64,000 nt of DNA from positions 19,406,001 through 19,470,000 of the forward strand of contig NC_047070.1 in NCBI RefSeq assembly GCF_902459465.1, read 5' to 3'. The notes below the pieces were generated by a model. It was not told the origin of the DNA. It saw nothing but the letters and a program-made list of their open reading frames with translations, and ran no database searches. This DNA is from Asterias rubens (lineage: Eukaryota). The translations under genes were made by a program, and so were the position numbers. This document shows, in pieces, positions 1,142-52,705 of the stretch; within the stretch, counting starts at the first letter, position 1, and each line of letters opens with the position of its first letter.

Positions 1142-1186
1142 AATGAAAGGGAACAGACTCTAAGCAGTTCCATATGGTTGACATTG
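1142..1186 (+). CDS. Gene A exon (loop D), NEREQTLSSSIWLTL
   Basis: Acceptor ctacag, donor gtaagt. 45-nt size and sequence match the conserved nAChR DEKNQxLxTNxWL exon. Confidence 0.92.
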
Positions 1187-2302: not shown

Positions 2303-2412
2303 ACTTGGACGGATGATTACTTGACATGGGATCCTGACGACTATGGTGGAGTCTATGTGTTCAAAATCCCCTCGCACGAAATATGGCTTCCTGATATCTA
2401 CTTTTATAACAA
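2303..2412 (+). CDS. Gene A exon (loop A), TWTDDYLTWDPDDYGGVYVFKIPSHEIWLPDIYFYN
   Basis: Acceptor tgtacag, donor gtgaga. Classic 110-nt nAChR exon with WxDxxLxWDPxxYGG and WxPDxxxYN motifs. Confidence 0.95.
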
Positions 2413-9720: not shown

Positions 9721-9923
9721 TGCCGAGCTGCAAACGAGAAACTTTCTTGTCGGTCCAGTGGTCAAGATCTTCTCTAATGGGGGAATCATGTGGGCAGCCC
9801 CGGTCAACTTCAAAGGGTACTGCCTGCTCGATGTTCGCTACTTCCCATTCGACCATCAGCACTGCGATATGAAGTTTGGTCCATGGCAACACAATGGCAA
9901 AGAGATAATCATGGAGGGACACG
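9721..9923 (+). CDS. Gene A exon (loop E, Cys-loop, loop B), ...YCLLDVRYFPFDHQHCDMKFGPWQHNG...
   Basis: Polypyrimidine tract plus attag acceptor, donor gtaata. Cys-x13-Cys loop with FPFD. Overlaps ORF 9758-9964. Confidence 0.96.
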
Positions 9924-10471: not shown

Positions 10472-10557
10472 TTATATATATATTTTTTTTATATGATTAA
10501 CTTAGCCGTTTTAGCAGTGTATTCATTTCTGTTTTGTTGCCTTGATTCTCTCATCAG

Positions 10558-10884
10558 GTAGCCAGTCAGTGTTCATGAGTAATGGTGAATGGGACATGAC
10601 AGGCATCAGTACCGTAGATAACCTTGTATATTACCCAGACGATCCAGGGGTCCCCTTTACAGATACAACCTTCACCATCAAGTTCTCAAGACGTTCAGAG
10701 TTCTACGTCTTTAATCTTATGATGCCATCGTGTCTGATTTGCCTCATGGCGGCGCTCGCTTTTCTGCTGCCACCTACGTCACAAGGAAAGGTCAATCTTG
10801 GGGTCACGTTTCTATTGTCGATGACAGTGTTTCTGATGATTGTTGCTGAGTCTATTCCACCGACCAATCAGGTCCCAGTTATCG
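10558..10884 (+). CDS. Gene A exon (loop F/C, M1, M2, M2-M3 linker)
   Basis: Acceptor catcag, donor gtaagt. Encodes SNGEWD...YYPDDPGVPFTD...RR..FYVFNLMMPSCLI...LLPPTSQGKVNLGVTFLLSMTVFLMIVAESIPPT..VPVIG. Confidence 0.96.
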
Positions 10885-11283: not shown

Positions 11284-11876
11284 GTCAATATTTTGCTGCA
11301 ACAATGCTGCTGGTATCCTTGTCGTTGGTTCTTAATGTCATAGTTGTGGCCATCTTTACCCACGCACTTACCGGGCAGCCAGTTCCAAGATACATTCGTA
11401 CTATTGTCCTTGGTGTTTTTGCTCCAATTGTTCGCATCTCTTCGGAAGAAATCCGTGATATTCGTCGAAAAACCTTTAAGCAAAAGAGTCACAATCATAA
11501 AGTTCTGACGAAGTCCGGAGGTGGAACCAAGTTTACTACCGTCCCGAGCAAGGAACATTCAAAAACACATGGAGTCAATTTCTACATGGATTACGTACCC
11601 AACTCGCATCATAGCAACGACAGTGACAACTCCAAGAGACACGGGGAACAGTTCGAAGCTCTCACGCGAGAATTGAAGAAAATGAACGAGACCTTGGCCC
11701 ATATGAAACAGGGTGAGAAACAACTGACACCCGAGCAGAAACGAAACTACAGAGAATGGGTTTTAGTCTCACGTGTTCTTGATAGAACCTTTCTTGTTCT
11801 TTACTTACTTGGCAATATTTTATCTGTTGTTTTGCTAGTGTTACCTGTCATGATACGAATGCAATCAGCCTCGTGA
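11284..11876 (+). CDS. Gene A last exon (M3, intracellular loop, M4, stop)
   Basis: Acceptor ttgtcag. Encodes GQYFAATMLLVSLSLVLNVIVV (M3) and EWVLVSRVLDRTFLVLYLLG (MA/M4), ending in TGA. Matches ORF 11259-11876. Confidence 0.96.
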
Positions 11877-19382: not shown

Positions 19383-19942
19383 TTAGACCTGCACAAAAAA
19401 CACGAGGAAGGTTGTGGCTGATCCAATCAAGCACATAAGAAAGAAGAACCTGTCCAAGACAATGGCGACCCTCTTCCACTCTGTCTGCACCCGTCTCGAA
19501 TTCACCTCCACCTCGATGCTGAATGTAATCTTTTGCATCTCCCGTAGCAACGCAAGATAGAGGGCGCGATTCCTATGCAGAGAGTCCTTGTTATCACCTG
19601 AATCATTTTGTCTGTTTTGTTCCGATTCGTCGCCTTTGTTTTCCACGTTACATCCATTCGATACCACTCTTGATCTGGAAGAGTTACCGGTCACCTCAGC
19701 CATTAGGCTCTTTGTCTCCCATGATTTGAGCTCCTGTGCGAGCCTGTCTCCGATGGTTGGACGTCGTTTGGAGCGACTGCTCTCTGATGGTAGCAGTACA
19801 CGACCGATACCATTCAGTATGTACTTCTTGATCCATGGTGGAACAGGTTTGCAGTCAGGGCCTCGGTGGTGCATATTGAGGACTGTTACAGACATCCCGA
19901 TTGAGATTGAGATCAGCACCATCGTGCAGGCAAAGTACTGAC
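19383..19942 (-). CDS. Gene B exon 8 (M3, intracellular loop, M4, stop)
   Basis: Acceptor ttttcag. Encodes GQYFACTMVLISISIGMSVTVLNMHHRGP...EWKRVAIVLDRFFF, ending in TAA. Confidence 0.97.
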
Positions 19943-20261
19943 CTGAAAAAAGCAACACCAAGAAAATACTTGACTTGTATGTTCGTCAGTTACGTTTGAA
20001 GCTTTGCATGGTGTGAAGTGTAGGAACAAGTTAAGTATACATATTAGTTAACTTGCGAGTACGACCATGAAATAAATCTCCTTTCAAGGAAGTGTTGACT
20101 TTGAAAAGAGCCGGTTTGGTGTCGTATAGTATACTCCGCTCGTCTTAAGGAGAAAGCTTGTTCGTCATAGAACGACACTTTTCATGCTTCAAGTTTTACC
20201 ATCATTTTCCTTTAATGTGAACGAGAGAGAACAATGATATGATGTTGATACACAATCTCAC

Positions 20262-20469
20262 CTATAACGGGAACTGTACTCGTGGGTGGCATAGTCTCCG
20301 CCACCAGCAGCAGGAAGACGGTGAGTGACAGTAACACCGTTACACCAAGACTAACTTTCTCTCCAGACTCTGGAGGTAGGAAGAACGTCAACAGCGACAC
20401 CAACGACAAGAACATGCAAGGGATCAGCAGATTGAAGAGATAGTAGAGTGGGCGCCTCTGAAATAAAAC
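20262..20469 (-). CDS. Gene B exon 7 (M1, M2, linker)
   Basis: Acceptor cttgtag, donor gtgaga. Encodes [18 protein letters not shown]...[40 protein letters not shown]. Confidence 0.97.
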
Positions 20470-22187
20470 CTACAAGAAATAAACATGGTTAGTAAAAGTC
20501 TAGCGAAGTCTCGTGCGATATACGGGACCTTGGATGACCTGGTATTGACTATTTGTAATGATGTGGAGGAAACAATGTGCTGTGCGAGATTTGTACATCA
20601 TTACTATTATCAGACTTTCCAAGTAGTTCTCTTTTGTGAAATAAAGTAATTTGTCCGAAAAAGTCAATACCTACAAAACATTAATAGTAATACATATCTT
20701 TGTAAATGATCGTGTCGTTTCCATAATTATACAAGCACTGTCATTTCTTCTACATAACGACACAATACTCTGCCCATACATTCATTTTGTTTCCCATTTG
20801 ATGCAGATGCAAACAAGAACCGACATTCTTAACATCATCATGTCCGCTGGCTTAAACTTTAGACTGATTAAACAGTTCATTTCATTGGTGTCACTTATTG
20901 TTTGTCATGGCTTACAAATGTCAAAAGGTATCCGGCAAGCCTGTTGGTCTATACTGCTGGTGTCTTTGGGGAGTTATTGCCCCGGAGAACCCAAAAGAAA
21001 ACGTGATTGTCCGTATCAACTTGGACGCATTGCTTCTTCAACATAAAAACGATCAGTGAATTATCTTTCTATTTCAATCCTTTGGGAGTGGTTATCATTA
21101 CATCCAAAGCAAGGACGTATACCATAAGACATACCCCAGGCTATGGAAACAAACAGCAGCGTTTAAAAGTTAAATTTAACTTGAGGACAGAAACTGAGTA
21201 TCAGGTAGTCCGCTGTGTATGAGCGATTTTATTTGAAAGACTTGATTTCATTTGGAAGACTTGAAGCAGGAGGTCTGAACCCATTGTGCCTTTAGTGGTA
21301 AACGTGACTTGTATCCGATCATACAAAACCTACTATGGAAGTCTGCATCACGTAGGGCATATACAGTGTAATTATTAGTCATCTCTCTTGTATTTTTAAT
21401 GGCCATTTCTTCTTCCTTCACCTGAAGTCAACTGACAAATTCATAATTGGCTTTTGACTTAATACCAAATAGAAATTAAGTAGCGGTGCACAGAATTAAA
21501 GAATGGCGATAAGCGTGAGTTTGTTTTCTCTATACAGATCTCCGGGTAGTTAGTATTCACTGTGACCCAGCTGTTCGTGTTTTGCTATTCCCTAAACACA
21601 TCTAATATATCGTCATAATGCAAATCTACCTGTCGTTGGGTCCTTAAATGTATTGGAGGCATTTTTAAATAGAGGTAACTGTTGGCCCGTTTAGCCTAAA
21701 TAATTCAGAGCGTCTCGGAACGACTTATTTACACTTAGTTTGACTTAGTTAAACGAGCTGCATTACCTTACGCTTGAATTCAACTACACATGCATAGACC
21801 ATTTAGACTAATAAAGAACAAACTAGGTCCCACCTTCGGCGGTTTTTGCTGAGCGAATGTTGAGGGAGCTACAATTGTGATCCTGGAAGGTTGTAATTTC
21901 ACACTTGATATACTCTCGCTATAAACCTATCAACTTGGTTTTTGAGCTGGGTTGCCGATGGCGTTCGAATAGTAAACAAACAACTCTGATTGGCATATAT
22001 TTTTAATTTTCACACACACCAACACACACCATAATCAATATAAGGCAAAAATTGCTAAAATCATGGTCAATCTGCTTTTAGGACACTAACCCGATTCGAC
22101 AAACTTAAAATAGAACCAGAATGTTGAAGATTCATCGTGACTTTAACTCGTAACAAGTTGATACCCAACCTTAGTCAGTGTACCCAC

Positions 22188-22309
22188 CTCGTACACAACG
22201 TCAGTGTATTGTTTACCAGGGTCGTCTGGGTACTCCATTTTGTTACTGTGCACTGTGACCTCGATCATATCCCACTGGCCATCGCTATTGAAAACAGTTT
22301 CATCGCCTC
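22188..22309 (-). CDS. Gene B exon 6 (loop F/C), GDETVFNSDGQWDMIEVTVHSNKMEYPDDPGKQYTDVVYE
   Basis: Acceptor ttatcag, donor gtgggt. Phases 1 and 0 fit the flanking exons; homologous to gene A SNGEWD...YPDDPG. Absent from the ORF track. Confidence 0.94.
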
Positions 22310-25300
22310 CTGATAAACAATGGTAAAAATAGTAGACATTTTAAAGTTAGCATCTGTACACGTGACTTTCATGATAACTTCAACAATCTTGTCTTTTATG
22401 TTAGAGTTTTAATGTTTTAGTTTTTAAATGGGTTATATTATAAAAGGTTGTTAGCTTCCGAAGCCGTCTTTCCATTCAAATTCTATCATCCGTAAGTCAT
22501 GCCCCCATCGTTTTCTCTGTAATACAAAACGTGTTCAATGCATCAACTGATGGTTATCTGTAAAATGGCAATACAAAAACTGTTGATCATGTTGAAACCG
22601 AATAAATTTTCGAAATGAAAGTTTTTTTGTTTTTTTTAACGTTTAATTTATATTAAAACAATTGTGGTTTAACTGAGATTAAAGGTAAGGGTGCCATGCC
22701 ATGCCTGGGTTAGGGTTTATTTTGATTTACTATTGGAAAGGGGTTATGCTGAAAAGCGACACATTGTGAAGAAATAAAGCCACTCTTTTGGGGGAAGGGT
22801 ACATTCTCAAAGCTATGAGGTTTACATGCATTTATCCTAAGTATTAGGCAGACTTCATTGCAGTACCTACGACTAGTGTAACAATAACCAAATCGTTCTA
22901 AATACAATGTAGCATCTACGAGTACAATTCTACTGATCAAATATTGAAGGTTTTTGTTTCGTCAAGGAATTTGTCGAGCTGCGTGATAGAGTTTGGCTGC
23001 CAACGAAAATAAAAGAAATAAATTACAATATGCTTTTTAATTTCTTTCTTAAGAATATATTATAATCACTAATGTCTCACATGGGAGCAAATAGTGTGAA
23101 TCAAGGAGAGACAGTCACCTATGGGAAACGTGTACTTCATTTTGAACACGAGCTGTTCAGAGATGAATCTACAAGAATGTCTAAGATTCCACTAATAAAT
23201 ACCACAATGATCAGTTTGTACTTGTTTATGCCTCTGAAGAAGGTCCGGTTTAGAATATAAACAAATACATAATTGAAAATATTGGCACAAATACGGAGAA
23301 TTGGATCACACACATTGTAAATAAGAGATTAATCCGATGGTGTGACGTCACACACCGATTTTCATTATACATAGTTTACTAATTGAAAGTCTTAAATTGA
23401 ATCAAGAAACATGAAAAGGTGAACCTCATCTTAAATATATAAGAGTATACATGGAATTGTTATAAATGAAAGCTGCAGCTGATAATATGAAATCATGACT
23501 TGATCATCAGATTGATAGCTGAACGCAATGTGGATTCTAAGAGTGATGGGTAATCAAACATTTTACACTTCAAACAACTGCAAATACTACGCACTGTATG
23601 AGGGTGCATTCAGACACGGTACTAAAGTTGGTTTAACTCATGGTTCAACTCGATTGAGTTCATAAAACGAGAACAAATGTTACACCCCGCATCCAACAAT
23701 AAATACAGCAATTTTTTTACTATATATTTAACAAAACTAGCGTTGTGTGAAACTGATTGTTTTTATATTTAAAGGAAAAAATGTCATATAAGATTTGTGC
23801 TTGTATCTTAAAAATCCAATAAATTGGCATTTTGGAATTAATATGAATTTTGTTTCAATCTATGTCAGCAAGCATTGTATACTTCAACAACATGAAAACC
23901 AAAAAACCCAAAACGTTTCTCTCTTAATTCAATTGTATTCATGAATGTGACAAATGTTAAGCAAAATCAGCCAAACACTTGTCACTGAATGCTAAGTTAT
24001 TGTGTTATTAACATAAATTTCAATTGACAGAATATCCAGAGGAATGCCTTGCGGGGTATCCGTGTAAATGCGTGCTGACAACGTAAATTGAAACACTTTG
24101 CCCCTCAGAAAACAATTTTGTTTTCAAACGAGGGCGAAGCATAATGAAATTGTGTGTAACATGTAACTGAAATGATAACTAAAAACGCAACCCCCTCCCG
24201 AGCAAACACCTGTGGGCTTTTAATGAAGATTTCATATCTAACGATCGGGGGCTCCGGATTAACTAGTGTATCGAGTGAGACATAATAGAAAGCCAGACGT
24301 AATTCCAGGTTTATTTTGTGCACCATTTTGATAATCGCAGATTGCCTGAAGCTAATCTTTTGTGCTACAAGAACGATATGCTTAGGTAAATTGACATTCA
24401 ATTTTAACAACTGAGTTTCATTAGTATGGCATTGCCTAAAGGCATTGCGTTGAACTGGTACATCAATGAGTGTTTGCACAAAATAGTCACATGCCTTGTC
24501 ACTATTTCACTTCGGCTGAATTCACTCCCGATCTCGTTGGCTATTAAAATAGGTGTCTTTTCTTAAGAATTGTGAATTTAAACTTTCAATGCTGCAATAA
24601 CGCAGACTGAATTACAATAAAATTAAAACAAATTTATTTTGGATGACGGGTTGCTTGTTTTAAAATTTTATTCTTTGCTTACCGTTAGAGGTACCAAGTT
24701 AACATCACTGAATCCGGCTTATAAACGCATGTGTGTTTTTACCTTTTTGTTCAGATTTCATGGAAATACAATTCCCAACAATTATTTGATAGTAAGCTGT
24801 GCTTAATTGGAATATAGTGAGAGTATGAAACCTAGTCATTGAAACTATTTGATAACCAGCTGAGTCGAATCTGATACATATGGATGGTTTCAGGCAAAGA
24901 TTGGAATGGATGTTGATGAAGTAGGTCTAGGCATTCTTAGAATTGAGTAGGCTGATTCTAAGCTGTCAAGCTTCATTTCTACAAGCTGTGTGTTGTATCC
25001 TCTTTCATGGTCAGATGGATTAATACAACCCAGGCTTAGTTAACATTCCAAAACTCTAATTTTTTGCTTCATTGGGTTAAGAAAATAAAACAAATAATTA
25101 TTATCCCATATGCCTAAAAAATACCAGAACCAAAAGAAAAACAAAGTAAAAGAAATGAATGAATGCAAAACCATTACCAAGCAACTATTGAATTTAGTTG
25201 TTAGTTTTTATCAATCTGCATCAAACATTCGACTTAAGGAAACAACATGCTTCATTGTTAATACCATGGACACATTGCTTTAACATTGTTGAAATTTAAC

Positions 25301-25478
25301 CAACATGTAAAAGTCAAACCATTTATTTAATTAATGCAATAATCGCTAGTGAAGTTATTTGTCTCTATCAAATAACTGTTATATTATTTTGATTTGTTGA
25401 ATATATATATATTTTATTATTATGGTTAATATTATTATTTGTTTTCCCTTAGGGGACACGGTGTTTTCTATTCGTGGT

Positions 25479-25849
25479 TTAAAGGCAGTGGACAATATTG
25501 GTAATTACTCAAAATAATTATTAGCTTAAAACCTTACTTGGTAACGAGTAATGGGTAGAAGTTGATAGTAAAAAACATTGTGAGAACGGCTCCCTCTGAA
25601 GTAACGTAGTTTTCGAGAAAGAAGTCTTTTTCCGAGACTTTGATTTCGCGAGCTCAGAATTAGAAGTTGAGGTCTCGAAATCAAGCATCTGAAAGCACAC
25701 AACTCCGTGTCACAAGGGTGTGTTTTCTTTCAGTATTATCACGCAACTTCCGACGACCGAATGAGCTCAAATTTTCACAGGTTTGTTATTTTACACCAAG
25801 TGATAAGACTGGTCTTTGACGATTACAAAAAGCGTCCAAGTGTCTTTAA
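25479..25849 (+). mobile_element. MITE family 1 copy
   Basis: TTAA-AGGCAGTGGAC left TIR; degraded right TIR ending gtctttaa. Confidence 0.9.
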
Positions 25850-28098
25850 ATCAGAGTCTCTCATTTTATGATAATCAGAATCTGGCGTCAACGTTCTCCC
25901 TTACTATACTTAGCATGCAGCGGAGGAGCACATATTTAATGCTTTTAAAGTTCTACAACCACACAACAAAGTGCTTGCAGCTCAGCATTTGAATCGAAGC
26001 TTATTTTGGGTATTATAATTTCAATTATTTATGAAAAAACACAAATAAAAGGGTAAAATAAATAATTCTCAAGCCGGCAGTTTATTAACTAGTTTATCGT
26101 TAATGCGCAGCAAGGATGGGAAAGGGTATGTTTTATAGATGTTCGATGGACTAATAAATTGTACCTTTACTAAGTTCAACTTGCTAATGAATGAGTTATG
26201 GATGTCTAATGGATGGATAACATATGTTTTAGGTTGTATCATAAATCTTGTACAAGTAATATGCAGCTACAAGAAAGATGTTGCAGTATGTTGCTGCTTT
26301 AATGTCTCGTAAATTTAGGCTATGTTTCAGCTACAATGTATGGTGGCAAATATGAAAATAAATAGTGTTGGGGATAAATTTATAAAAATAATGTAATAGA
26401 AAAACAATCTATAATGGTTTAACAATGAAACACCAGCATTCGTGACTAAAAATCTGAAAAAGAGAAGGGCTGAGTTCAAAATTGAAATATAACAAATATA
26501 AACTGGATTATGATAAGTATTCAGTTGAAATGTTAGTAATAACTCTAAAACCAAGACAAGAACCGATATAGATAATCAATGTACTTTTAATGACTGAATG
26601 CAATTTGGTTGTTTGAAAGCAAACAAAAACCCCAAATCTACCGATTAATAACTTTACTTAGAATGGAAAAACCATTAAAATCAATGAATTTTAAAGTCGT
26701 GAAAGCCAGTGATTACAAAACGAAAATGCTATAACGATGGACAAAGAACCAAAGCATGTAGGAAAATGAAGAATAAGTTGGCAAAGATGTATTTTGGATT
26801 CGGGGAGAATGGGAATAGGGAATGGCAAGCAGCGGTGGGTTATATGAGCAGGATTGGAGTAATGCTTAAAGGCGTTCTGGACAACAGAACAAGAAAGTGG
26901 GAGATAAAGCGACTGGCAATTGGAATGGTAAAATCTGTGTTATGATATAGGGCCTTACCGCCTTCAGATGTAGTGGTGTGGTCATCTTTATCTGAATGGG
27001 CGAACCGACATAATATTACACATTACTTCAATAGTGTTGCCTTTAAAGTAAACATACTCAAGTAAGCAATCAGTTGATCAGGAAATTGTGGTTCTCAAAA
27101 AAAAATAATGATCCGCGTGTATTGCCATGTTTCATTTCATGTTTGAATTGTAAGAAGAAAAGAACATCCGAAGCACTTTTCTTTTGAAATGTTTTTGATA
27201 ACTGTTAAAACACAAAATAAGAGGGACAAAACATCAAACAGATCAGAAAGACCACCAGGTCACGTGTGAGGTGACGTCATCGAATAAGGATCTCGCAAGA
27301 CACAAACATGTACTGACTATACACTTGGGATCTTCTTAGTTGAAACGTGCAGCGTAACACTACGGGGTAATAAAGTAAGTAAACTCAACAGCTATTTCAT
27401 TTTCCCTTAACAAAAATAGCAACTATTTATAGTGCAATGTTTGCAGGCACGTGCATTGAGTGCAGACAAACTAAGGGTATTTTAAGCGCCACGGTGGATC
27501 CATTAGGAACAAAATACAGTTTGGCCATTATTGTCACTTACTTTGCATATTCAGAAGCATGATTAATATGTACATAAATTATGCAAATAAAGGCAGTTCC
27601 TGCGAAACACCGTATTCGATCCCGCTCCTCATTGTTTGAAGATAAGTCTTTTGAATGTCAACCTCTGACCTTCGTTTGTTATCAAGGTCCAATTTGATAA
27701 TAACTTTGAATTCAAAACAGTTCGCTCCCGATATTCAATCTCTGCAGTGACGTCATTGCAAAAGATTGATTGAAAACCTAAAGTTGAAGTACCATGTATG
27801 GTACTACCCTACATCAAGTATTCATAGTAACGTAATAAATGATTAATGATTATTGCAAATAATTGTTTGTAATAGCATGGTGGGAGTACGAGGCCTTGCG
27901 GTTATAGATGAAAGGCAGACACCTCATAGAACTTGTAATGTTAAAAGAAATTGGGGTAATGTGTCTACATATGGATGACCATGCATTACCTAAACATTGC
28001 TACTATCCATGTTCATGCGATATTCGAATTATTCCCTTAATTAATGTCTCTTATAAATGAACGTCTTAGTGGGGATAATACGAAAGTGTTCCTCTTAC

Positions 28099-28298
28099 CA
28101 GCCCCAACGACGACAACTTCTGTTGCATCATGCTGCCACAAACCAAACTTGAGTGTACACGTTTGCTTATCAAAGGGAAATGTGGTGATGTCAATTTTAC
28201 AGTAGGTAGTGAAGATTTGGGGGCAACCCCAATTGATAGACCCGTCGTAACTGATGACTGCTGTCTGACCCTTCAGAAAATTGGCGTATTTGTCGGCA
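28099..28298 (-). CDS. Gene B exon 5 (Cys-loop), ...YCKIDITTFPFDKQTCTLKFGLWQHD...
   Basis: Acceptor cttcgcag, donor gtaaga. Cys-x13-Cys with FPFD; 200 nt, phases 2 and 1. Absent from the ORF track. Confidence 0.96.
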
Positions 28299-28685
28299 CT
28301 GCGAAGAAAAACAAGAAGAGGATTATTAATATTTCAAAATTATTAGATACTCTGTCTTGATTTTAGTAAACCAATATGTATAACTATTTTCTTAAGCTGC
28401 GCCACGCATCTGAGATCTTGTCTTTGTACCACACACATTCAAGTATCTTCTCAAAACTTATCTTATGTCGCAGAGTTTCAAGGACTAATTGTGTTGTGTC
28501 TGTTTTCTTTCGTTTCATTTTTCGGCTTTACTACGCCTTGAACACCCAGTCTTTATTATTATTATTATTATTTCATTTTATCACAGCATGCAAAAGAAAG
28601 ATCTCATTTTCCTTTGTGCCGGTAACTCCTCGAGTCGGGCTACGTCCCGTAACCTTAGATCTCAAGGGTCTTTCTCAGGATCCTC

Positions 28686-28740
28686 GCTATTATTATTATT
28701 ATTATTATTATTATCATTATTATTATTATTATTATTTATT
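28686..28740. repeat. (TAT)n microsatellite
   Basis: About 17 ATT/TAT units with one interruption. Confidence 0.95.
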
Positions 28741-30473
28741 AGTTATAATCAATTTTAAGACATTGCTCATGATTGTCGAGTGGTTGCCTATAGATTCCTA
28801 ACTGAAGTGAGACTCCCTGATTGACTACAGCCAAGCGAAATACAAGAATTTCATGTTCTGTGTCTCTGAGGATAGCAGCGGGCCACCCATTGCCGCCCTT
28901 AACAAGCCCTCAGCTGCCTCTCGAGTCTTGAGAAACCTACGCCAGTCGATGATTTCATCGACAGCATCTCATATCAGTTTAAATATTAACTTGGCGTTTG
29001 AGCGTACTTGTCCACGTAGTAGGATCAATTATCATAATCTGAGTGGCAATCAAATCCTCTGGATTCACCTGCAGACATTGCTTGATATAGTTCAACTACA
29101 GGTGCTAGATGAACAAAGATATCCCTATAATAACACGCTTCATATCAGAGCTAGATATATTCGGCTAGACGCAGAACCGTTTGAATGAGCCGCACTGATT
29201 ATTTATAACTACATAGTTCCTCACACTCTTCTACCTTTCTGTATTCCAATTTGACGCTGTTCTTGTTAGGGTCAAAGAATTACTAAACCCATATACAAAC
29301 AAGTCATTAATAAAGTAATTCAAGCAGTACTTAGGTACCACTAGAGTCGAGTAATGCGGTAATTCATAACAATTCCTCGGCGTCTATTTAGAATCCACAG
29401 AGCCAACGAATCGGAATTCAAGCTTCCAATAATCGCATGACAGACATCCAGACACTAATGGTAAAAAACACTCCCTACCGGAACCCAACATCCCTAATAA
29501 CAATCATCGTGACGTGGGACTCTGCGTCACAGGAACCAGCCTATATGGGTCAACAATGCCTCGCTTTGAATTATACACCGCTCTTTTACAAGTGTGTTCA
29601 TGCAAGTTCAATGAGAGACTTCCTGACTGCTGTAAGAGTAAGTCATTGCAAAAGAACAAATACTTCCAAACTGTTAAAAAAAAATGGAGTATTGATTAAA
29701 CATCAGATGTTGATATCTGCCCAGGTGTATGTCCTTAATGAAATTCTTATCTCTGATTCAACTTGCCGTAGTGTCATTGATTAAAGTAACTGTGTACATC
29801 ACCAAGGTGGTGCCTGTCGCAGAAATGGCACCAATAGTATAAAGGATTTCACATAAATGCAAAATGTACAAGTATAAACCTTAACATTAGTCATAAGTAA
29901 TTGAACATACACAGAGTAAATTGTTGATCAATATTTGCTGATATGGATGATGTTCTATACATTAGCAATCATTTTGATCAAACAATGTTCATTCATTCAT
30001 TGGAATAATCACACACACTATCGGCATTCTGGTTCCTGCCGTATATTATTTGACATTAATCTATGAATAATGCATTCTTGAAACGCAGTAATTGCATTCT
30101 GGCTACTATTGACAATTGCTGCAATGTAATTGTACCTGAGTGGCAATCACAGACGAGACAGGTACCCAATTAAGCAGAAATCCTCAAGAAATCTGACGTC
30201 AACGTCATTATGAAGATTCCGGTATGGAGGTGTTTTGCTCATAACAGAAGCAAATGGATCAAATAACATACCTAATTAGCGTCTGAATTCATTAGCACGT
30301 TGTTTTGCTCATAACCAATCTTATAATTTCTTAAAGAATGTTTTAATTACTCTTTTATCACAGTCATTTAATTTGTTTTATTGCTCATTTCAAGTATAAC
30401 CTTGTTCTCATGTGTTGATACAAATGAGAAGAAGGTTGAAATGAGAACAACTAATTAAAACGAATTGACGTTA

Positions 30474-30826
30474 TTAAAGACACTGGACACTATTGGTAAC
30501 TGTCAAAGACCAGCCTTCTCACTTGTTGTATCTCAACAAAATACTTATCCTGTGAAAATTGAGAGTTGCGACATAACTATTAAAGAAAAACACCCTTGTC
30601 ACACGAAGTTGTGTGCTTTCAGATGCTTGATTTCGAGATCTCATATTCAAAATCTGAAGTCTCGAAATAAAATTCGTCGAATATTACTTCTTTCTCGAAA
30701 ACTAAGTCACTTCGTTTCTCACAATGTTTTATACCATCAACCTCTCCCCATTACTCGTTACCAAGTGAGGTTTTATGCTAATAATTATTTTGAGTAATTA
30801 CCAATATAGTGTCCACTGCCTTTCAA
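30474..30826 (-). mobile_element. MITE family 1 copy
   Basis: ttaaagacactggacactattggtaac ... accaatatagtgtccactgccttt. Confidence 0.9.
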
Positions 30827-33264
30827 ATGTTGTCTTTCTCATTTTGGTATTAGTTTATTAGTAGCATCTGTTCCTGGACTGTAAGAGGAGAACATATGCG
30901 TGCCTACATTTGTACCTTTTAACGGTTAGCATAGAAACTTTAGACTAGTCTAGAAATGCATTTGACCGTTACATGACTGTAATATTCCATTCTTCCTAAA
31001 ACTGATACCCCGTCAATAGCACGCAACTTGTTCATACTATAGCAGTTTGTCCCAATCACAACTGATAGATCCAAAAATGTTTTATAGACATATTTCAGCA
31101 GATCACTTCCTGATCTGAAATTGTCCCCGTGGGCCAAATAATAATTCCCATCCCTGAATTATGTTTTAATCTTAGCTACTTGTACCTGAGAACAAAACAT
31201 TGATTCCGGTTTACAGATATATTATTTTCTCCACAGGCGGTAGATAACTGTAATACACTTCCTGTATAATACGTGTAGGTTAATTATAAAACGAATTAAT
31301 CAAAAAGCGATTGGTTTGTCTGATAACCATTTCATACAGGAACGATAGTTTCAAAAAAGTGTTCGAAAGATCAGAACACAAAGCAACCTGATATTCTAAA
31401 AGAACAGTTAGTCGAACGAGGCAGTGAGGCATACAATTTATACCTTTCGGTATCATGTCTGGAATGGTTTTGGGGAATCAAAATACGAAGTATTAAGATG
31501 AATCCTAAAATCAACAATGAATTATTAATGTAAGTACAACAAAAAATTGTTAGGATTGCTAGACCGACAAATTTCAGAAATGAGTTAAGGTAATTGGCAC
31601 CGTAAAAGCAAGTCCATTTATATTGGAGATCGGCAATCGGCGTATCTCTGGGGAGAGTGTGCATGCACTTTATTATCATTTTCTGGCGGCAGATACTACC
31701 CTTGCAATAAAAACATAAATCGCTTCAAAATCATCACGATTATTGAAAATTTCATCGGCGGCGTTATCTCTAACTCCCGGTTTTCACCTACAGCAAAAAC
31801 AACAGTGAACTGATAATAACATATGAGGACAATGACTCGTACATGAATAAAATTAGTACACTTTACACCAACATCAAGTTGTCACTCCAGAGTGTCTTAT
31901 AATGGTTGACGCAACTGTCAAGATACCCTGTATATTAGTAAAGATCAAACGCATGCTAATATTTCACTTTTATCGACTTTCACATCTTTGTTAAGGGTGG
32001 AACTCTTACAAAAGGTTAATGGTACAAGAGTTACCTGTAGTTGATTTTACTCGTGTGAACATATTTTAATGGAAATACGACAAGCTCAAAGCAATTAAAA
32101 TTCAGCTTGCACTTAGTGCCTACCTCATTGCCTACCGAGACTGCATTTCGGTTAAGACAGTACAGTCATATAGATTGTATAAATCTGTTTGGAGCGTTTT
32201 ATGACTGTTGAATTTGGCTCAATGTTTATACGTCAATAACTAATTCTTAAAATGTTTGTTTGTGTGTTACCAAGCTAACGTTTGATAAAAATACTGTTAG
32301 CTTAAATGGTCCAAGACACTTTAAAATGAGACTTTATAAATAAAACCATAATATCAGCATTCTAATGACGCATAAGTTGCCGTATCTGAAAAGAGGAGCC
32401 CACGTACTTGTTTTACTGAAACACAACGCCGGTATATAGAGCTGAACTCTCCAGTGGTATATTGTTTACTATAATGATATTTCCATTTGCATTGGAGTAT
32501 GAATGCCTATAGACTCACATAAAACTAGTATCCTTCTATTCTGTCTCTATATTCTAAACGTGACCAACATCTGATGATCAGATATTGACAAGCACGAAGC
32601 AAGTTACAGCCTTCGGACTCTAAAGTATGTCCCACCGAAGTGTTAACTTCAAGGAGCTCTGAGCTCTGCTCATTTAAGTGTCACTACCTCGACAACAACC
32701 TCATGGGGAAACAACAACTTTATGAAGAACATAAAGGAACTAGAGAAATGTAACACCTCGACTAATACAGTCATACTTTTAAAACTAAGTCCAATGCGAT
32801 CAAACTGACTATAGATCACGTTCAGAGATACGGTATAAAAGGTTTTCTCGGTCAATTTCGGCAAATGAACAGCCAATTTAACCATAAAGCTATTATATTT
32901 TGCGCGAAATCGAATGCTACTACAAATGGTAATTCGATTTCGTTCTATGATTAGCCAAATGAAATGTTGGGCCATCCGATTTAACAAACAATAATTCAAT
33001 TTAGCAATTCATCAAATCAGCATTCAAATTCGCAGATGCTTCTTAAGGCGTGTGTGTCACGAAAAAGAATGGAGATACGCTAAATTGAACAGAGTGCTAA
33101 AGGAATTTGACTCGACTCAAAACGAAATTGAATGGCCGAATTTTGAATTTGAAACGCTGTAACAACTGGAGAGGTAAAACAGCGTTAAATCGAACGCACG
33201 AACATTTTTATTGCCCCTTTGCCGAGTTTGACCGAGAAAACCTGTATAATAAAAGCGTTTATAC

Positions 33265-33374
33265 TTATTATAAAGCGTGACGTCGGGCATCCATATCGTC
33301 TCAGAAGGAACTTTGATGTTCTTAAGGTTGTTATAATCCTTAGGGTCCCAGGTAAGATACTCATCTTGCCACTT
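33265..33374 (-). CDS. Gene B exon 4 (loop A), KWQDEYLTWDPKDYNNLKNIKVPSETIWMPDVTLYN
   Basis: Acceptor ctgcag, donor gtataa. 110-nt conserved nAChR exon. Confidence 0.95.
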
Positions 33375-33750
33375 CTGCAGAAACAAAAGAGCAATTCAAA
33401 TGACAGACTTGTTGAATTAGTGTGTTGAAATACCGATTATGGAATGCACAACATAATGTGTTAAACAATTAATAATTCAATTTAAAATAGAAATGACAGA
33501 TATACTAGAATCTGTGTTGTCATTATTTCGTTCTGGTTAAGGATGTAGTCGTTCTTTTTGCCATTTGTTTTCACAATGTTGTTGACAATATCACAGTAAC
33601 AACATAAGTGTACGACATTGTTGAGTGTAGGTAGAAATCATTTGAATCCTGACTTCATCTATTGTTAAAATAAAATGAGTATAATTTTTTTTTTCATTTC
33701 TTTTTTAAAGCCACAGTAAATATTTGACATGTGGGTTTGTGATTCACTTA

Positions 33751-33894
33751 TAGAATACTAGCATATAGGCCTACTAGAATACTAGCATATAGGCCTACTA
33801 GAATACTAGCATATAGGCCTACTAGAATACTAGCATATAGGCCTACTAGAATACTAGCATATAGGCCTACTAGAATACTAGCATATAGGCCTAC
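33751..33894. repeat. 24-bp tandem repeat, 6 perfect copies (TAGAATACTAGCATATAGGCCTAC)
   Basis: Exact 24-bp period. Each unit contains the palindrome TAGGCCTA. Confidence 0.97.
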
Positions 33895-35745
33895 TTTAAA
33901 GTACTGCGACATTTTCTACGGTTCCGAGAAAAGTGCAAAAGTTCATCGAGCCAATGTCGTTTTGACTTGGCGCATTGGATGACAATAATGGTTTAGCCAA
34001 CTGTGGGCTTCGTGTTATTAACAGGCTTTGAATACCAGACTGTAAGATGAAAATGTGACTCCTTCATGCCTCATTGACGGGCACCTTTCATGAAACTTCA
34101 GGAGAACATTTGTAATACTGTTACTTTATTTGAGTATCAAACGATAACAAACACCATGACGATTCATAAGCTGTATCAAATTTGTCATCGCTATTGGTCC
34201 CTGTTAGGCTAATGATTACCGCAAAGAGAGTTAAACGTGTTAACATTATGCATTTTCGTTATTAATTTTGAAAGAAAAGTATTTCCCAAGGTGACTTGCA
34301 TTTGTACATTTAAAAAAAAAAAGAAGATTTTTATTAACATCTATAAATTATGTTGAAGTTCAATTATTACCCATTAACCGTAATTTTGTTTATTTAACCG
34401 CTTTTAGATAGCAATCCCTTAAATATACACGTGAGAGAAAACAATGTTCCCTTGTGTTTGAAACGCGGGTATCTTAAATTTGATAAATTAACACTTAATG
34501 TTATTTCCAACAGTTTAATTATAGTATGTTTTTGAAAAGCAGTTGAGTAGGCTACGCCTATGTTAGTCTCTTGCTCCACTTATGACGCGTGCGTTCATCG
34601 AGACTTTGAAAGGAGCGCCAAAGGCTTAACGACCGATGTATAATGCTTTGAAACTTGGTAATCAGTGCCATCGGTAGTCCGCAGACAATGTTGAAACAGC
34701 TGCATGGTTATAAAGACGGCAGGTCACTAGACGGCTGTTACCTGGTTGATTTGTTGTTAGCTTGTATCTCTCTCATGCTAACTGGAATCTCTTTTTGAGC
34801 ATCTCCAGACGGCTGTTATATGTACGATTTGATGCTAGTGCCTCTGTCTGCCCGAGAACTGTAGTCTCAACTTGTTACTTTATATCCCAACAGGTGAAAT
34901 CAATATGTTTTCTTCTTAAGAGAGAGATTGCTTTTGACTGTTTAAAGTAACAGAGAAAAATTACTCAGGTGGGAGCCAATCGAAGAAGGGGGGCAACGAT
35001 GTCAAATAACCGACTGAAAACCGTATATTTTTGGAAGCAATTACACCTGAAAGCGAGCTCGGGTTTCAAGATAATTTTCCAAATGTTTTGCAATCGTATT
35101 CGATGAAGCATCTTTGAGAAATGACGAGAAAAACTTAATAAATATTGAGCGAAGACCATCATCTGTCGTCGGGTTCTTAAACCCCTTTGAGCAAAATACT
35201 CCTGCACAACAATTATCTGTATATAACTTAAAGATTAACGAACTCCTTCAACCTGGTTGAATCTAGCCCCTTTTCATCATGAATCGAAGACTGAGGGGGC
35301 AGGTGTTGCCCACTAGGCCCACTCTGTTCCCCACCAAGCCCTAAATGGGTAAGGTAGAGAACCTTTCAGCATAGGGGATAATGGTGCTGAATCTTGGCTC
35401 GCATAATGCTGACATGATTATTATCGCATGGAAATAAACCTGAACCAAATCTGATGGTTTATTGACGTTTGCCCTTATACTGCCCATCTGGTCATATTTC
35501 AGGCAAGTGTTGAAGTTTCTAAACAAGTTTAACATGTCACATTATAATAAATCTTTAAAATAATAAAGAGTAACATTTCCTGGAAGGAGTATTTTAACCC
35601 ACCGCTTTCAGCTAATATTTGTTCCTCATGTCTAGATTAAACACGGCTATGTAATTGATGTTGGTGTCAGAATGATGGAACAAATCAACAGTATGTTTGT
35701 TCTCTTGATTTGTATATACTTAACAGAACATCACATGAAGCTTAC

Positions 35746-35790
35746 CAAAGTCAGCCATACATTTGTCTTCAATGTCTGTTTCCGCTCATC
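35746..35790 (-). CDS. Gene B exon 3 (loop D), DERKQTLKTNVWLTL
   Basis: Acceptor ttttcag, donor gtaagc. 45 nt; 9 of 15 residues identical to the gene A equivalent. Confidence 0.94.
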
Positions 35791-36180
35791 CTGAAAAACA
35801 AAATCACAAATGATTAATTATAGAAACAGGTGAGACAATTCCCTCGATGTATCAGATGTCATCTCTAACAGAGATATGCGTCAGTTCGACATATAATAAA
35901 TATATTTATTCTGTTTCAATTCTGTTCCCAAGTTACTCTCGTTAATTATGAATGAGGTTACTAAACCCACGTATGTATCTTAATGAATTCGCCATTTGGG
36001 ACAATCCTATAGGGACTACACGGGTTCACCTTTAATACGTGATATAAATAAACAGTGTTGAACATGAAAGTCTAACATTCAACTGGAATACAACGTGGGT
36101 ATGGAAAGGTTATGGTTGGGGGTGATGTTCACTTGTCAAACCGACACCAGACCTGGAAATACTTATAATTGATAATCACT

Positions 36181-36540
36181 TTAAAGGGTCTATGTAACTT
36201 TTGTAGGACAAAAAACACAATGTCTACAGATTTACACTAAACTTACACAGTTTGAAGATAATGATAGTAGAAAGCTTCCATGAAAATATTACGTGCTTAG
36301 GTGCTGTAGTTTTGGGGAAATGAGTAAAACAATGTCATGAAAATAATTTTCGTCTTATGAGACGAAAATTATTTTAATCATCTACAAACATATTTTCATG
36401 ACATTGTTTTACTCATTTCTCAAAAATTACAGCACCTCAGTAAGTAATATTTGAAGGGAAGCTTTCTACTATCATTATCTTCAAACCCTGTAAGTTTAAT
36501 GTTCATGGACATTTTGAAAAAGTACCCACAAATCCTTTAA
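36181..36540. mobile_element. MITE family 2 copy
   Basis: TTAA at both ends (ttaaagggtctatgtaac...aatcctttaa); colinear with 7299-7662. Confidence 0.9.
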
Positions 36541-37565
36541 ATTTGAAAAGCATTCAAGGCACTAATCAGGTATCTCGTCGTCACATTAGTCCTTCAATCA
36601 GTCCTTCTAGAGAAACATTATTCAGGTTGTACCCAAATTAACGAACCGTTTACGACTGGATATTGTCGGATATAATGATTTGACACTTATTAATAATATT
36701 TAATTTCGTATTCCTATGCACAGCATATCAAGGTTGATGTGCAGAAGTCTACAATCTGATGTGTTATTATTGAATATGAAATATTTTGGATCATCACAAA
36801 AATATAGCTAGCTATTAAATTCTGGACACAACTGGGCATGTAATTTTCATACACAACAAAAACAAAATTGGACCCGAAAACTTTGTTAAAGCAAACCAGA
36901 ACTGCACCAATTAATAACATGTAAAGTGAGAATGGGTGTAAAATGCAATTTGTTTTTTGTCACTCCGCCCACATATTGTTAACGTTATACTAGATGTTTG
37001 ACATTTCGCCCCCTTTTGCATAAACATATGTAATTAACGTAGCTCCCAATCCCAGGAGGGTGTCACATTACGTGTAAGGAATTTGATTGTTCATATATGA
37101 ATATATGGATTATCAACAAAATCCAGATCAAATATTTTGAAATTTTCTCTGAAATAAGACAAACCTATGGAATATTTTGCGAGAGAGGAAGTTATTTTAT
37201 TTTATTCTTTTCTTCTATTTAAAGAAGACTTACATCAATTCGGAGATGCTGGATTTATGTCCTTGTTACCCACTGTAATACGCAAATATTATACTACGTG
37301 ATATATTCGTTTTGCATGAATTAATGCCGTAAATTGCTTCATGACACCTGACTTAAATGTATTCGTATTCAGAACTGTATATCCTCCCCATGAGTTACTG
37401 AGTCTTTAACGGCATAAAGTCTGCCATTAAACACACTATTCAGACAGATTGCTCATCTTGGAATGTTAGAAATTCAAACCGAGCCATTGTTTGTGTCTCC
37501 TTGTTTTATATTCTGACAACAAATTGTATGGTGATGAGATATATACGTACAAACAAAATGAAAGG

Positions 37566-37933
37566 TTAAAGACAATGGACACTATTGGTAATTGTCAAAG
37601 ACCAGTCTTCTCGCTTGGTGTATCTCAACATATGCATCAAATAACAAACATGTGAAGATATGACCTCAATCGGTTGTCGAAGTTGCGAGATAATAATGAA
37701 AGAAGAAAAACCCCACTGTCACACGACGTTGTGTGCTTTCCGTATGCTTGATTTCGAGACCTCAAACTCTAAATCTGAGGTCTCTAAATCAAATTGAAAA
37801 CTACGTCACTTCAGAGGGAGCCATTTCTCACAATGTTTTATAATATTCACCTCTCCACATTACTCGTGACCAAGTATGCTTTTTAGGCTAGTAATTGTTT
37901 TTAGTAGTTACCAATAGTGTCCACTGCCTTTAA
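37566..37933 (-). mobile_element. MITE family 1 copy
   Basis: ttaaagacaatggacactattggtaatt ... ttaccaatagtgtccactgcctttaa. Confidence 0.92.
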
Positions 37934-51612: not shown

Positions 51613-52080
51613 TTCTGTATGCAGGAACACAGCGGTTTAATACAAAATTCACTAATTACTCACCTATAGGTCCGTACAGCTATAAATCTCTGTCATGCTG
51701 TAAAGGCATTGTACGCAATAAGTCTAATGAAATATAATGTATTCATTACATGGAAACAGAGACCAGACCTTTTGTTTCACATTGACATTTTATTGCCGTA
51801 GTTATGTTTTTATAGCGGCAATAAATAACTGGAATCCACATTTTCCTTTTCTATTTTTAGTGATGTGATTTTGCCTGCTGGACAATTATGTTTGTGGTAA
51901 AATTATCTTCGTTAACAACATATGTTTCCTCTATGGACTACAATTTCAAGAATACAAATCAAAAGTCAATGCCTCTGAAACAAAAAGTATTTTTGGACCG
52001 CTTTATTGTTTCAGTTGTTGTCCACTCACCAAGCCGCAATTAATTTACCTGATATAAATAGAATGCAATCAGGACATGTA

Positions 52081-52466: not shown

Positions 52467-52705
52467 ACCCTTGTTTATGGATTATGTGCAGTATATTATT
52501 ATTCGATGCAGTTGCTGGTTGTTGACTGTCTGTATAAGGTCTAGCAATCATGGATTAACACAGATTGTAACAGACTAGAGTGAACCCCCGTTGGCAACTA
52601 TAGTGTTTCAATTTCTTGTCTCAGTCAGCACTAACGCGACAAGTAAAAAATGAATCTCGTGCAGCAAATAATGGTCATAACTAGTACAGTTCATTTACAG
52701 CGATG

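What the first reader, a model, noticed from the sequence alone, without database searches (positions are those of the whole stretch)
10770..10850. Gene A pore lacks the -1' glutamate (PPTSQGKVNLG versus [11 protein letters not shown] in gene B)
Seen: in the M1-M2 linker gene A has T at the cytoplasmic-ring position (E in gene B), Q at -2', G at -1', N at 2' and F at 7'. It keeps 9' L, 13' V and 20' E. Established: the -1' Glu ring is the main cation/Ca2+ selectivity determinant of nAChRs; anion-selective Cys-loop receptors and anionic molluscan nAChRs lack it; full charge reversal in alpha7 used a -2' Pro insertion, E-1'A and V13'T. Inference: gene A may give reduced Ca2+ permeability, a non-selective or anion-permeable pore, or tune selectivity in a heteromer. 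It lacks the PAR motif, so anion selectivity is not assured.
Basis: partly seen in the sequence, partly recalled or inferred. Interest (0 to 1): 0.7.

Follow-up and report, generated by a model that had tools for sequence, protein, structure and literature searches.

The report
Starfish channel subunit lacking pore glutamate
A starfish gene for a nicotinic-receptor-type ion channel subunit really does lack the pore glutamate that normally makes these channels pass cations and calcium. The change is not an error: it is an ancient signature (Ser-Gln-Gly-Lys) kept in every echinoderm class and in acorn worms, but nobody has tested its effect on ion flow.

Summary
Window 10770-10790 (+) encodes PPTSQGK. 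An ungapped alignment to human alpha7 (PADSGEK) gives T at -4', Q at -2', G at -1' and K at 0'.

- **The gene is real.** Gene A matches an annotated Asterias rubens protein (P0161, "alpha-10-like") at 100%. Spliced RNA contigs in four public runs carry it.
- **The motif is ancient.** SQGK is neither an error nor a private variant. All 16 full-length orthologs examined have it. They cover starfish, brittle star, sea urchins, sea cucumbers, feather stars and three acorn worms.
- **Paralogs differ.** All 18 aligned paralogs, including gene B, have G-E-K at these positions.
- **One origin.** The SQGK clade is monophyletic (SH-aLRT 99), also with the pore columns removed, and it mirrors the species tree.
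- **Purifying selection.** Linker codons differ only synonymously between species.
- **Not a known anion channel.** The subunit lacks the Pro-Ala motif of anionic nicotinic channels and keeps 9'L, 13'V and 20'E.
- **Conserved gene pair.** Genes A and B form a tail-to-tail pair that is conserved in Acanthaster and in a crinoid.

Best reading (inferred): an accessory-type subunit that removes charge from the intermediate ring of heteromers. This would lower conductance and Ca2+ permeability, as 5-HT3B and muscle gamma/epsilon do. No function was tested. The earlier scan notes on this window concern loop C, not the pore.

The parts
10770..10790 (+). Gene A M1-M2 linker PPTSQGK (-6' to 0'): Thr at -4', Gln at -2', Gly at -1', Lys at 0'
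   Evidence: Translation, coordinates, ungapped alignment to human alpha7 PADSGEK. In the AlphaFold model, M1 is 236-256, the loop is 257-264, and the M2 helix starts at Gly265, which is -1'.
10791..10850 (+). Gene A M2 pore helix, 1' to 20' (N2', T6', F7', L9', V13', M16', I17', E20')
   Evidence: per-position table, SQGK clade against paralogs.
10558..10884 (+). Gene A exon carrying loop C (YYPDDPG), M1 and M2
   Evidence: Exact match to P0161 residues 190-298. Both flanking introns are GT..AG and are skipped in RNA contigs of runs X1, X2 and X3, and the downstream one also in X5. Splice sites read.
1142..1186 (+). Gene A exon (P0161 residues 70-84). The first 69 residues lie upstream of the window.
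2303..2412 (+). Gene A exon with the WxPD / loop A region
9721..9923 (+). Gene A exon with the Cys-loop (C-x13-C) and loop B
11284..11876 (+). Gene A last exon: M3, intracellular loop, MA helix, M4 and the TGA stop
19386..62707 (-). Gene B (P0186, 499 aa, nine exons). This canonical SGEK paralog is convergent with gene A; the 3' ends are 7.5 kb apart.
   Evidence: Exact exon mapping, Pfam domains. The same tail-to-tail pair is found in Acanthaster and Anneissia.
20356..20376 (-). Gene B M1-M2 linker PPESGEK, with Glu at both -4' and -1'

Best explanation
Gene A encodes an intact, transcribed, strongly constrained subunit of a nicotinic-receptor-type pentameric channel (P0161). It belongs to an orthogroup confined, as far as these searches see, to echinoderms and hemichordates. 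In the ancestor of that group the pore-mouth motif S-G-E-K became S-Q-G-K. Each copy therefore puts a Gly where other subunits put the intermediate-ring Glu, leaving the 0' Lys unopposed. In starfish, sea urchins and sea cucumbers the -4' Glu was later lost as well. Inferred mechanism: the subunit is a non-alpha, accessory-type member of heteromers with SGEK-bearing paralogs, and its conserved neighbour gene B is the first candidate partner. Each copy removes one negative charge from the selectivity filter. That should lower the local negative potential, the unitary cation conductance and above all the Ca2+ permeability. The channel should stay cation-selective, because the partners still supply Glu and gene A keeps 9'L, 13'V and 20'E and has no Pro-Ala. 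What is shown: the sequence, its position in the pore, expression, splicing, conservation, monophyly, purifying selection and microsynteny. What is inferred: assembly partners, stoichiometry and every permeation property.
For: - Sequence and pore numbering.
- Gene model: 100% match to annotated P0161, with both Pfam domains.
- Expression: spliced RNA contigs in four runs, three of them long contigs (2.2-2.9 kb), from two sister species plus a marine metatranscriptome.
- Conservation: SQGK in 16/16 orthologs from all five echinoderm classes and three hemichordates; G-E-K in 18/18 aligned paralogs.
- One origin: single clade with SH-aLRT 99 and a species-tree topology, unchanged when the linker and M2 columns are dropped.
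- Purifying selection: dN in M1-M2 is 0.008 between Asterias and Patiria while dS is saturated. Omega is 0.036 in M1-M2 between Asterias and Lytechinus. Linker codons differ only synonymously. Of 14 exonic differences to the sister species, 12 are synonymous.
- Word search: a search limited to the M1-M2 segment in 5.8 billion proteins returns only echinoderm orthologs, and the 63 residues are identical in three starfish genera.
- Microsynteny: the tail-to-tail A/B pair is conserved in Acanthaster (7.6 kb) and in the crinoid Anneissia (9.8 kb).
- Precedents: conductance falls about linearly with ring charge, and the muscle receptor has Glu in only four of five subunits (PMC2217203). Alpha7 E237A abolishes Ca2+ permeability (PMC5447003). 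5-HT3B has Ala at -1', needs 5-HT3A to reach the cell surface, and lowers PCa/PCs from about 1.1-1.4 to 0.5-0.6 (PMC2443672).
Against: - There is no functional or assembly data for any member of this clade.
- Gene A keeps the aromatic-box positions aligned with alpha7 (Y in loop A, W in loop B, Y and F in loop C, W in loop D). A principal binding face, and hence a homomer, is therefore not excluded.
- The RNA runs X1 and X2 that hold the spliced gene A transcript were not listed as holding the gene B exon. This is weak evidence, since not being listed does not show absence.
- No neighbour was seen within 10 kb in Patiria, Lytechinus or Ptychodera.
- No gene B ortholog from hemichordates appeared in my sample, yet hemichordates already have SQGK.
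Confidence: 0.5

Rival explanations
1. SQGK subunits form homomers or SQGK-rich pentamers. With no acidic residue at -1' (and none at -4' in starfish) and a ring of 0' Lys, their pore would be poorly charge-selective or anion-preferring. That would be a deuterostome route to an inhibitory nicotinic-type channel that differs from the Pro-Ala route.
For: - Per subunit, the net charge at the inner mouth is +1 in gene A and -1 in gene B.
- A single -1' change flips glycine receptor selectivity (A-1'E gives PCl/PNa 0.34; PMC2233820).
- Neutralising the ring is necessary for charge reversal in alpha7 (PMC2217203).
- The aromatic box is retained, so a homomeric binding site is conceivable.
- A brittle-star isoform (P0164) and the fragment P0003 also have Lys at 20', leaving no acidic ring at all.
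Against: - There is no Pro at -2', no Ala at -1', the linker has the same length as in cationic subunits, and 13' is Val, not Thr. The known anionic nicotinic-type channels all carry Pro-Ala (PMC4055736).
- Ring neutralisation alone was not sufficient in alpha7 (PMC2217203).
- 20' Glu or Asp is kept in 15 of 16 orthologs.
- The subunit lacks the loop C Cys-Cys of homomer-forming alpha subunits.
Confidence: 0.2
2. The substitution is functionally near-neutral for selectivity. Cation and Ca2+ permeation would be maintained by other features (20' Glu, the polar Gln at -2', backbone carbonyls, intracellular portals). SQGK would then be conserved for another reason, such as gating, desensitisation, rectification, or assembly and trafficking through the M1-M2 loop.
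For: - Echinoderm members changed several other M2 positions together (N2', F7', M11', M16', I17'). This suggests a co-adapted pore or gate rather than a single charge effect.
- Gln at -2' is as invariant as Gly at -1' (16/16), which points to a specific structural role.
Against: In every cation-selective family member tested, removing -1' Glu lowered conductance or Ca2+ permeability (PMC2217203, PMC5447003, PMC2443672).
Confidence: 0.2
3. The subunit does not conduct usefully. It would act as a dominant-negative or regulatory partner, or as a ligand-binding decoy, lowering the current of the receptors it joins.
For: A ring charge of -2 already cuts muscle receptor conductance to about 20% (PMC2217203). 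Gene A has neutral -4' and -1' positions.
Against: M2 is conserved as strongly as in conducting channels, with 6'T, 9'L, 13'V and 20'E kept in nearly all orthologs. A mere decoy would not need that.
Confidence: 0.07
4. Sequencing or assembly error, private variant, or decaying pseudogene.
For: None was found. Gene A is the only SQGK exon among at least 35 paralogous exons in this genome.
Against: - The exon sequence is identical in independent RNA contigs, and the transcript is correctly spliced.
- The motif is present in 16 orthologs of 14 species.
- Omega is far below 1.
- The reading frame is complete and the fold is confidently predicted.
Confidence: 0.01

Closest known systems
Human 5-HT3B subunit (accessory subunit of 5-HT3A/B receptors)
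   Same: It is a natural subunit of a cation-selective Cys-loop channel with a small neutral residue (Ala) at -1' in place of Glu. It cannot reach the cell surface without a Glu-bearing partner, and it lowers relative Ca2+ permeability (PMC2443672).
   Different: It sits on another branch of the superfamily and is not an ortholog. 5-HT3B also has Asn at 20', whereas gene A keeps Glu at 20' and has Gln at -2'. Whether gene A needs a partner is unknown.
Vertebrate muscle nicotinic receptor gamma/epsilon subunit
   Same: It is the one subunit in five that contributes no Glu to the intermediate ring of a heteromer that stays cation-selective. Conductance scales with ring charge (PMC2217203). It is also a non-alpha subunit. 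That the residue is Gln, and that the subunit is gamma/epsilon, is from my own knowledge.
   Different: It is not orthologous: gene A nests inside an ambulacrarian-only clade nearest to alpha7/alpha9/alpha10-like sequences. The motif also differs, Q-G against G-Q.
Anion-selective nicotinic-type channels of Lymnaea and Schistosoma (SmACC)
   Same: They are members of the nicotinic branch that lack the -1' Glu (PMC4055736).
   Different: They carry Pro-Ala at that site, which is the motif tied to anion selectivity. Gene A has Gln-Gly, no Pro, and Val at 13'. They are lophotrochozoan and flatworm genes, and some are alpha-type with Cys-Cys.
Engineered alpha7 mutants (E237A, and the charge-reversal triple mutant)
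   Same: They show what neutralising -1' does in a close structural relative of gene A (E = 3.5e-77). Ca2+ permeability is lost with E237A. Neutralisation is necessary but not sufficient for anion selectivity (PMC5447003, PMC2217203).
   Different: They are laboratory homomers in which all five sites are changed. Gene A is a natural subunit with co-evolved M2 changes.
Gene B and the other SGEK paralogs of the ambulacrarian YPDxPG family
   Same: They share the family, the loop C without Cys-Cys, the domain layout and, for gene B, the locus.
   Different: They keep G-E-K (18/18) and the canonical M2 sequence [18 protein letters not shown].

Membership tests
Cys-loop pentameric ligand-gated channel, nicotinic branch | Neur_chan_LBD plus Neur_chan_memb domains, C-x13-C Cys-loop, four membrane helices | tested here: met
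   Pfam PF02931 at 1.4e-51 and PF02932 at 2.4e-30. Cys-loop seen. The best solved relative is human alpha7, E = 3.5e-77. The model shows M1-M4 and the MA helix, mean pLDDT 79.8.
Alpha-type nicotinic subunit (the name given in the public annotation, 'alpha-10-like') | Vicinal Cys-Cys in loop C | tested here: not met
   Loop C reads YYPDDPGVPF, with Asp-Asp where alpha7 has Cys-Cys. The annotated name is therefore misleading.
Canonical cation-selective nicotinic subunit | Glu at -1' (intermediate ring) | tested here: not met
   Gly at -1' and Gln at -2', the same in 16/16 orthologs.
Canonical cation-selective nicotinic subunit | Other pore hallmarks: 0' Lys/Arg, 9' Leu, 13' Val, 20' acidic residue | tested here: met
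   K0', L9', V13' and E20'.
Anion-selective nicotinic-type channels (Lymnaea, SmACC) and anionic Cys-loop receptors | Pro-Ala at -2'/-1' (PAR-type motif) | tested here: not met
   Gln-Gly-Lys, with a linker of the same length as alpha7. The motif definition is from PMC4055736.
Anion-selective nicotinic-type channels (Lymnaea, SmACC) and anionic Cys-loop receptors | Measured anion permeability | not testable with these tools
   Needs electrophysiology.
Ambulacrarian SQGK orthogroup (defined here) | Monophyly, SQGK linker, YYPD[DST]PG loop C | tested here: met
   Clade support SH-aLRT 99 with and without the pore columns. Motifs listed.
Accessory (obligate heteromeric) subunit of the 5-HT3B or gamma/epsilon kind | Cannot form functional receptors alone and co-assembles with Glu-bearing partners | not testable with these tools
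   Only indirect support: no Cys-Cys, and a conserved pairing with gene B.

The most novel reading that the evidence does not exclude
The SQGK subunits build, alone or as the majority subunit, a weakly selective or anion-permeable channel through a Gln-Gly-Lys filter that has no Pro-Ala. This would be an independent, deuterostome origin of inhibitory or shunting nicotinic-type signalling, dating from before the echinoderm-hemichordate split. In brittle stars it could be tuned by isoforms that also turn 20' Glu into Lys.
Probability: 0.15. Interest if true: 0.8.

Novelty: new variant of a known kind. Interest (0 to 1): 0.5.

Why it matters
The -1' Glu ring is the textbook determinant of conductance, Ca2+ entry and charge selectivity in nicotinic-type channels. 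Natural subunits that lack it are few and have been informative: muscle gamma/epsilon, 5-HT3B, and the molluscan and flatworm chloride channels.

This case is a single-copy orthogroup that replaced G-E with Q-G once. It has kept the change through all echinoderm classes and the acorn worms, which on established dating is more than half a billion years. In echinoderms it sits beside a canonical partner gene. That gives three things:

- a clean natural experiment on pore electrostatics, using a swap of QG and GE between the two neighbouring genes;
- a concrete first pair to express in a phylum where, to my knowledge, no nicotinic-type receptor has been reconstituted;
- a correction to public annotation, which calls a subunit with no Cys-Cys and no ring Glu "alpha-10-like".

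If the channel turned out to be anion-permeable, it would be a new route to that property.

Tried and rejected
**Readings rejected**
- Sequencing error or private variant: rejected by RNA contigs and by 16 orthologs.
- Pseudogene: rejected by the intact frame, splicing, low omega and a confident fold.
- Membership in the Pro-Ala anion-channel group: rejected (PMC4055736).
- The clade as an artefact of the motif columns: rejected, since the tree without the linker and M2 gives the same clade.

**Steps that gave nothing**
- Nei-Gojobori dS between Asterias and Patiria is saturated, so no omega could be given for that pair. I used Lytechinus and the sister-species differences instead.
- No neighbouring channel gene lies within the 10 kb flanks in Patiria, Lytechinus or Ptychodera. 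Microsynteny is therefore shown only for Asterias, Acanthaster and Anneissia.
- Literature searches for the motif and for ambulacrarian nicotinic receptors found no paper on this clade. The Jiao et al. lophotrochozoan survey does not mention echinoderms or hemichordates.

**Steps not run**

Full report
**1. Observation**

The window is animal DNA with introns. Translating 10560-10886 on the plus strand gives one clean exon. It runs from loop C (YYPDDPGVPF) through M1 and M2 and reads LAFLLPPTSQGKVNLGVTFLLSMTVFLMIVAESIPP.

PPTSQGK occupies 10770-10790, and the 20' Glu codon is 10848-10850. HMMER aligns this stretch to human alpha7 without any gap, PPTSQGK against PADSGEK. The prime numbering therefore rests on a computed alignment: T at -4', S at -3', Q at -2', G at -1', K at 0', N at 2', F at 7', L at 9', V at 13', E at 20'.

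Gene B, on the minus strand, reads [11 protein letters not shown] at 20356-20376.

**2. The gene**

A library search returned a protein annotated [quoted passage not shown] (P0161, 494 aa).

- Its residues 70-494 match the window exactly in five exons: 1142-1186, 2303-2412, 9721-9923, 10558-10884 and 11284-11876. The first 69 residues lie upstream of the window.
- It has both Pfam channel domains. Its closest solved relative is alpha7, E = 3.5e-77.
- AlphaFold gives a confident four-helix membrane domain, with the M2 helix starting at Gly265, which is -1'.
- Gene B is P0186 ("beta-2-like", 499 aa, nine exons, 62707 down to 19386).
- Neither protein has the loop C Cys-Cys, so the "alpha" in gene A's name is misleading.

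**3. Expression and accuracy**

I laid contigs of four public runs on 9650-11950. Runs X1 and X2 are from the same organism, X3 is from a sister species, and X5 is a marine metatranscriptome.

- Long contigs (2.2-2.9 kb) in X1, X2 and X3 skip both introns at GT..AG. A short contig (239 nt) in X5 skips the second one.
- X1 and X2 show no difference in the M2 exon.
- The sister species differs from the window at 14 exonic sites. Twelve are synonymous, including Leu 8' at 10814. The two replacements lie before loop C.
- The motif is therefore transcribed, spliced and not an assembly slip.

**4. Is it private?**

No. A phmmer scan of 1.84 billion representative proteins with the exon gave four hits below 1e-30, and all four carry SQGK. 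A profile search then recovered the family.

| Group | Species | Linker and start of M2 |
|---|---|---|
| Starfish | Asterias, Patiria, Acanthaster | PPTSQGK VNLG |
| Brittle star | Amphiura | PPQSQGK |
| Sea urchins | Lytechinus, Diadema | PPTSQGK VTLG |
| Sea cucumbers | Apostichopus, Holothuria | PPTSQGK INLG |
| Feather stars | Antedon, Anneissia | PPESQGK VNMG |
| Acorn worms | Glandiceps; Ptychodera and Saccoglossus (two paralogs each) | P[AC]ESQGK ISL[GS] |

(Sequences and motifs.)

- In an alignment of 34 sequences, -2' is Gln and -1' is Gly in 16 of 16 clade members. In 18 of 18 others they are Gly and Glu.
- Among all 261 homologs fetched, SQGK occurs only in this clade.
- A word search limited to the M1-M2 segment returned only echinoderm orthologs. 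The 63 residues are identical in three starfish genera.
- In the starfish genome itself, 27 of the 30 best paralogous exons have [SA][GQ]EK, two have VGVVK, and gene A alone has SQGK.

**5. One ancient origin, then purifying selection**

- A maximum-likelihood tree puts the 16 SQGK sequences on one side of a branch with SH-aLRT 99.
- Inside the clade the order is hemichordates, then crinoids, then sea cucumbers with sea urchins and brittle star with starfish. That is the accepted species tree.
- Dropping the linker and M2 columns leaves the clade and its support unchanged.
- The G-E to Q-G change therefore happened once, before echinoderms and hemichordates split. That this is more than 500 million years ago is established knowledge, not tested here.
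- The -4' Glu is still present in hemichordates and crinoids. It became Thr (starfish, urchins, cucumbers) or Gln (brittle star) later. F7', N2' and M16' are echinoderm additions.
- Between Asterias and Patiria, synonymous sites are saturated. dN is 0.137 overall but 0.008 in M1-M2.
- Against Lytechinus, omega is 0.157 overall and 0.036 in M1-M2.
- The Pro, Pro, Thr, Ser and Gln codons of the linker differ synonymously among the three species.

**6. What it is not**

- The known anion-selective nicotinic-type channels of Lymnaea and Schistosoma replace the Glu by Pro-Ala (PMC4055736).
- Gene A has Gln-Gly, a linker of the same length as alpha7, and Val at 13'. It fails that membership test.
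- It also fails the canonical cation-subunit test at -1', while meeting it at 0', 9', 13' and 20'.

**7. How it most likely works (inference)**

- In the muscle receptor the intermediate ring sets nearly all of the negative potential at the selectivity filter. Conductance falls about linearly as ring charge is removed. A ring charge of -2 leaves about 20% of wild-type conductance, and the native receptor has Glu in only four of five subunits (PMC2217203).
- Alpha7 E237A loses Ca2+ permeability (PMC5447003).
- Ring neutralisation is necessary but not sufficient for anion selectivity (PMC2217203).
- Human 5-HT3B has Ala at -1', depends on 5-HT3A for surface expression, and lowers PCa/PCs from about 1.1-1.4 to 0.5-0.6 (PMC2443672).
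- Gene A looks like that kind of subunit: non-alpha, neutral at -1', and otherwise a well-kept pore.

I therefore favour a heteromer-tuning role (confidence 0.5). Each copy would remove one ring charge. In starfish it would also remove one -4' charge. The result would be lower conductance and lower Ca2+ entry, without loss of cation selectivity.

**8. A candidate partner**

- Genes A and B lie tail to tail, with 7.5 kb between their 3' ends.
- The same arrangement holds in Acanthaster. The B ortholog ends at 51296 in L033, and the A ortholog's last exon is at 59615-58917 on the other strand, a 7.6 kb gap.
- It also holds in the crinoid Anneissia. B-like P0180 ends at 38923 in L034, and A ortholog residues 436-494 lie at 48923-48747 on the other strand at 100% identity, a 9.8 kb gap.
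- A third channel gene lies upstream of B in both starfish.
- A pair kept since the base of living echinoderms suggests shared regulation. Clustered, co-assembling subunit genes are known in vertebrates (CHRNA5-A3-B4, from my own knowledge). This is a lead, not proof.
- No neighbour lies within 10 kb in the larger Patiria, Lytechinus and Ptychodera loci.
- Run lists do not show co-expression.

**9. Rivals**

- **Homomeric or SQGK-rich channels with weak or inverted charge selectivity (0.2).** The inner mouth carries +1 per subunit. Gene A keeps the aromatic-box residues aligned with alpha7. A brittle-star isoform also has Lys at 20'. Against this: no Pro-Ala, Val at 13', and 20' acidic in 15 of 16 orthologs.
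- **A change that matters for gating or assembly rather than selectivity (0.2).**
- **A current-damping, non-conducting partner (0.07).**
- **An artefact or pseudogene (0.01).** Refuted.

**10. Novelty**

The gene is annotated and the family is known. I found no paper on this clade or this motif. The principle, a natural subunit without the ring Glu, has precedents. I rate it a new variant of a known kind, of moderate interest. It would rate much higher if the anion-permeable reading proved true.

**11. Earlier scan notes**

Notes on this window (s1-150161, s1-150437) describe the Asp-Asp loop C and the ambulacrarian distribution. My searches agree with both. They do not treat the pore.

Noticed in passing
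L014 (G000:C19:10395550-10395870) and L022 (G000:C12:15121462-15121779); proteins P0203, P0220, P0224, P0228: A second echinoderm subfamily also lacks the -1' Glu. Its linker reads MPY[ND]VGVVK[VA][NS]L and is one residue longer. These are alpha-type subunits with Cys-Cys in loop C and a Cys-rich N-terminal extension. They appear to be the Fn14-like-domain receptors of scan note s1-180032. Nobody has looked at their pore.
   Followed up: partly
window 11873-19386; L033 51296-58914; L034 38923-48744: The tail-to-tail pair of the SQGK gene and the SGEK gene B is conserved in Asterias, Acanthaster and the crinoid Anneissia, with 7.5-9.8 kb between the 3' ends. A third channel gene lies upstream of B in both starfish: L003, about 4.5 kb beyond the right end of the window, and L033 1-4657.
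   Followed up: partly
P0162/P0163 versus P0164 (Amphiura filiformis); fragment P0003: Brittle-star isoforms of the SQGK gene differ in pore residues: 2' is Gln or Asn, and 20' is Glu or Lys. Fragment P0003 has Lys at both 16' and 20'. These may be alternative exons or merged tandem copies. The Lys variants have no acidic ring at all.
   Followed up: no
L013 and L015 (G000:C5:3.72-3.82 Mb): These paralogs have AQEK (Gln at -2' with the Glu kept) and Pro-Ser at 19'/20', so they lack the extracellular acidic ring.
   Followed up: no
window 4432-4656 (+), inside gene A's 7.3 kb intron: An open frame carries a reverse-transcriptase-like YADD motif in a GC-richer block (46% GC at 4001-6000). It is probably a retrotransposon fragment.
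   Followed up: no
window about 15400-16100 (+), between genes A and B: Long His/Pro/Thr/Ser-rich open frames occur in all three plus-strand frames, with strong GC skew (-0.31 at 14001-16000). This is low-complexity sequence, probably not a gene.
   Followed up: no
window about 47727-48169 (+), inside a gene B intron: There are three tandem copies of a unit whose translation repeats the same 36 residues, in a block with GC skew of +0.21.
   Followed up: no
L034 27353-27460 and 32616-32723; L032 19522-19629 and 19839-19946: The WxPD exon is present twice. The Anneissia B-like gene has two copies, both 100% identical to the protein. The Lytechinus SQGK gene has a second copy at 61% identity. These may be mutually exclusive exons or assembly duplication.
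   Followed up: no
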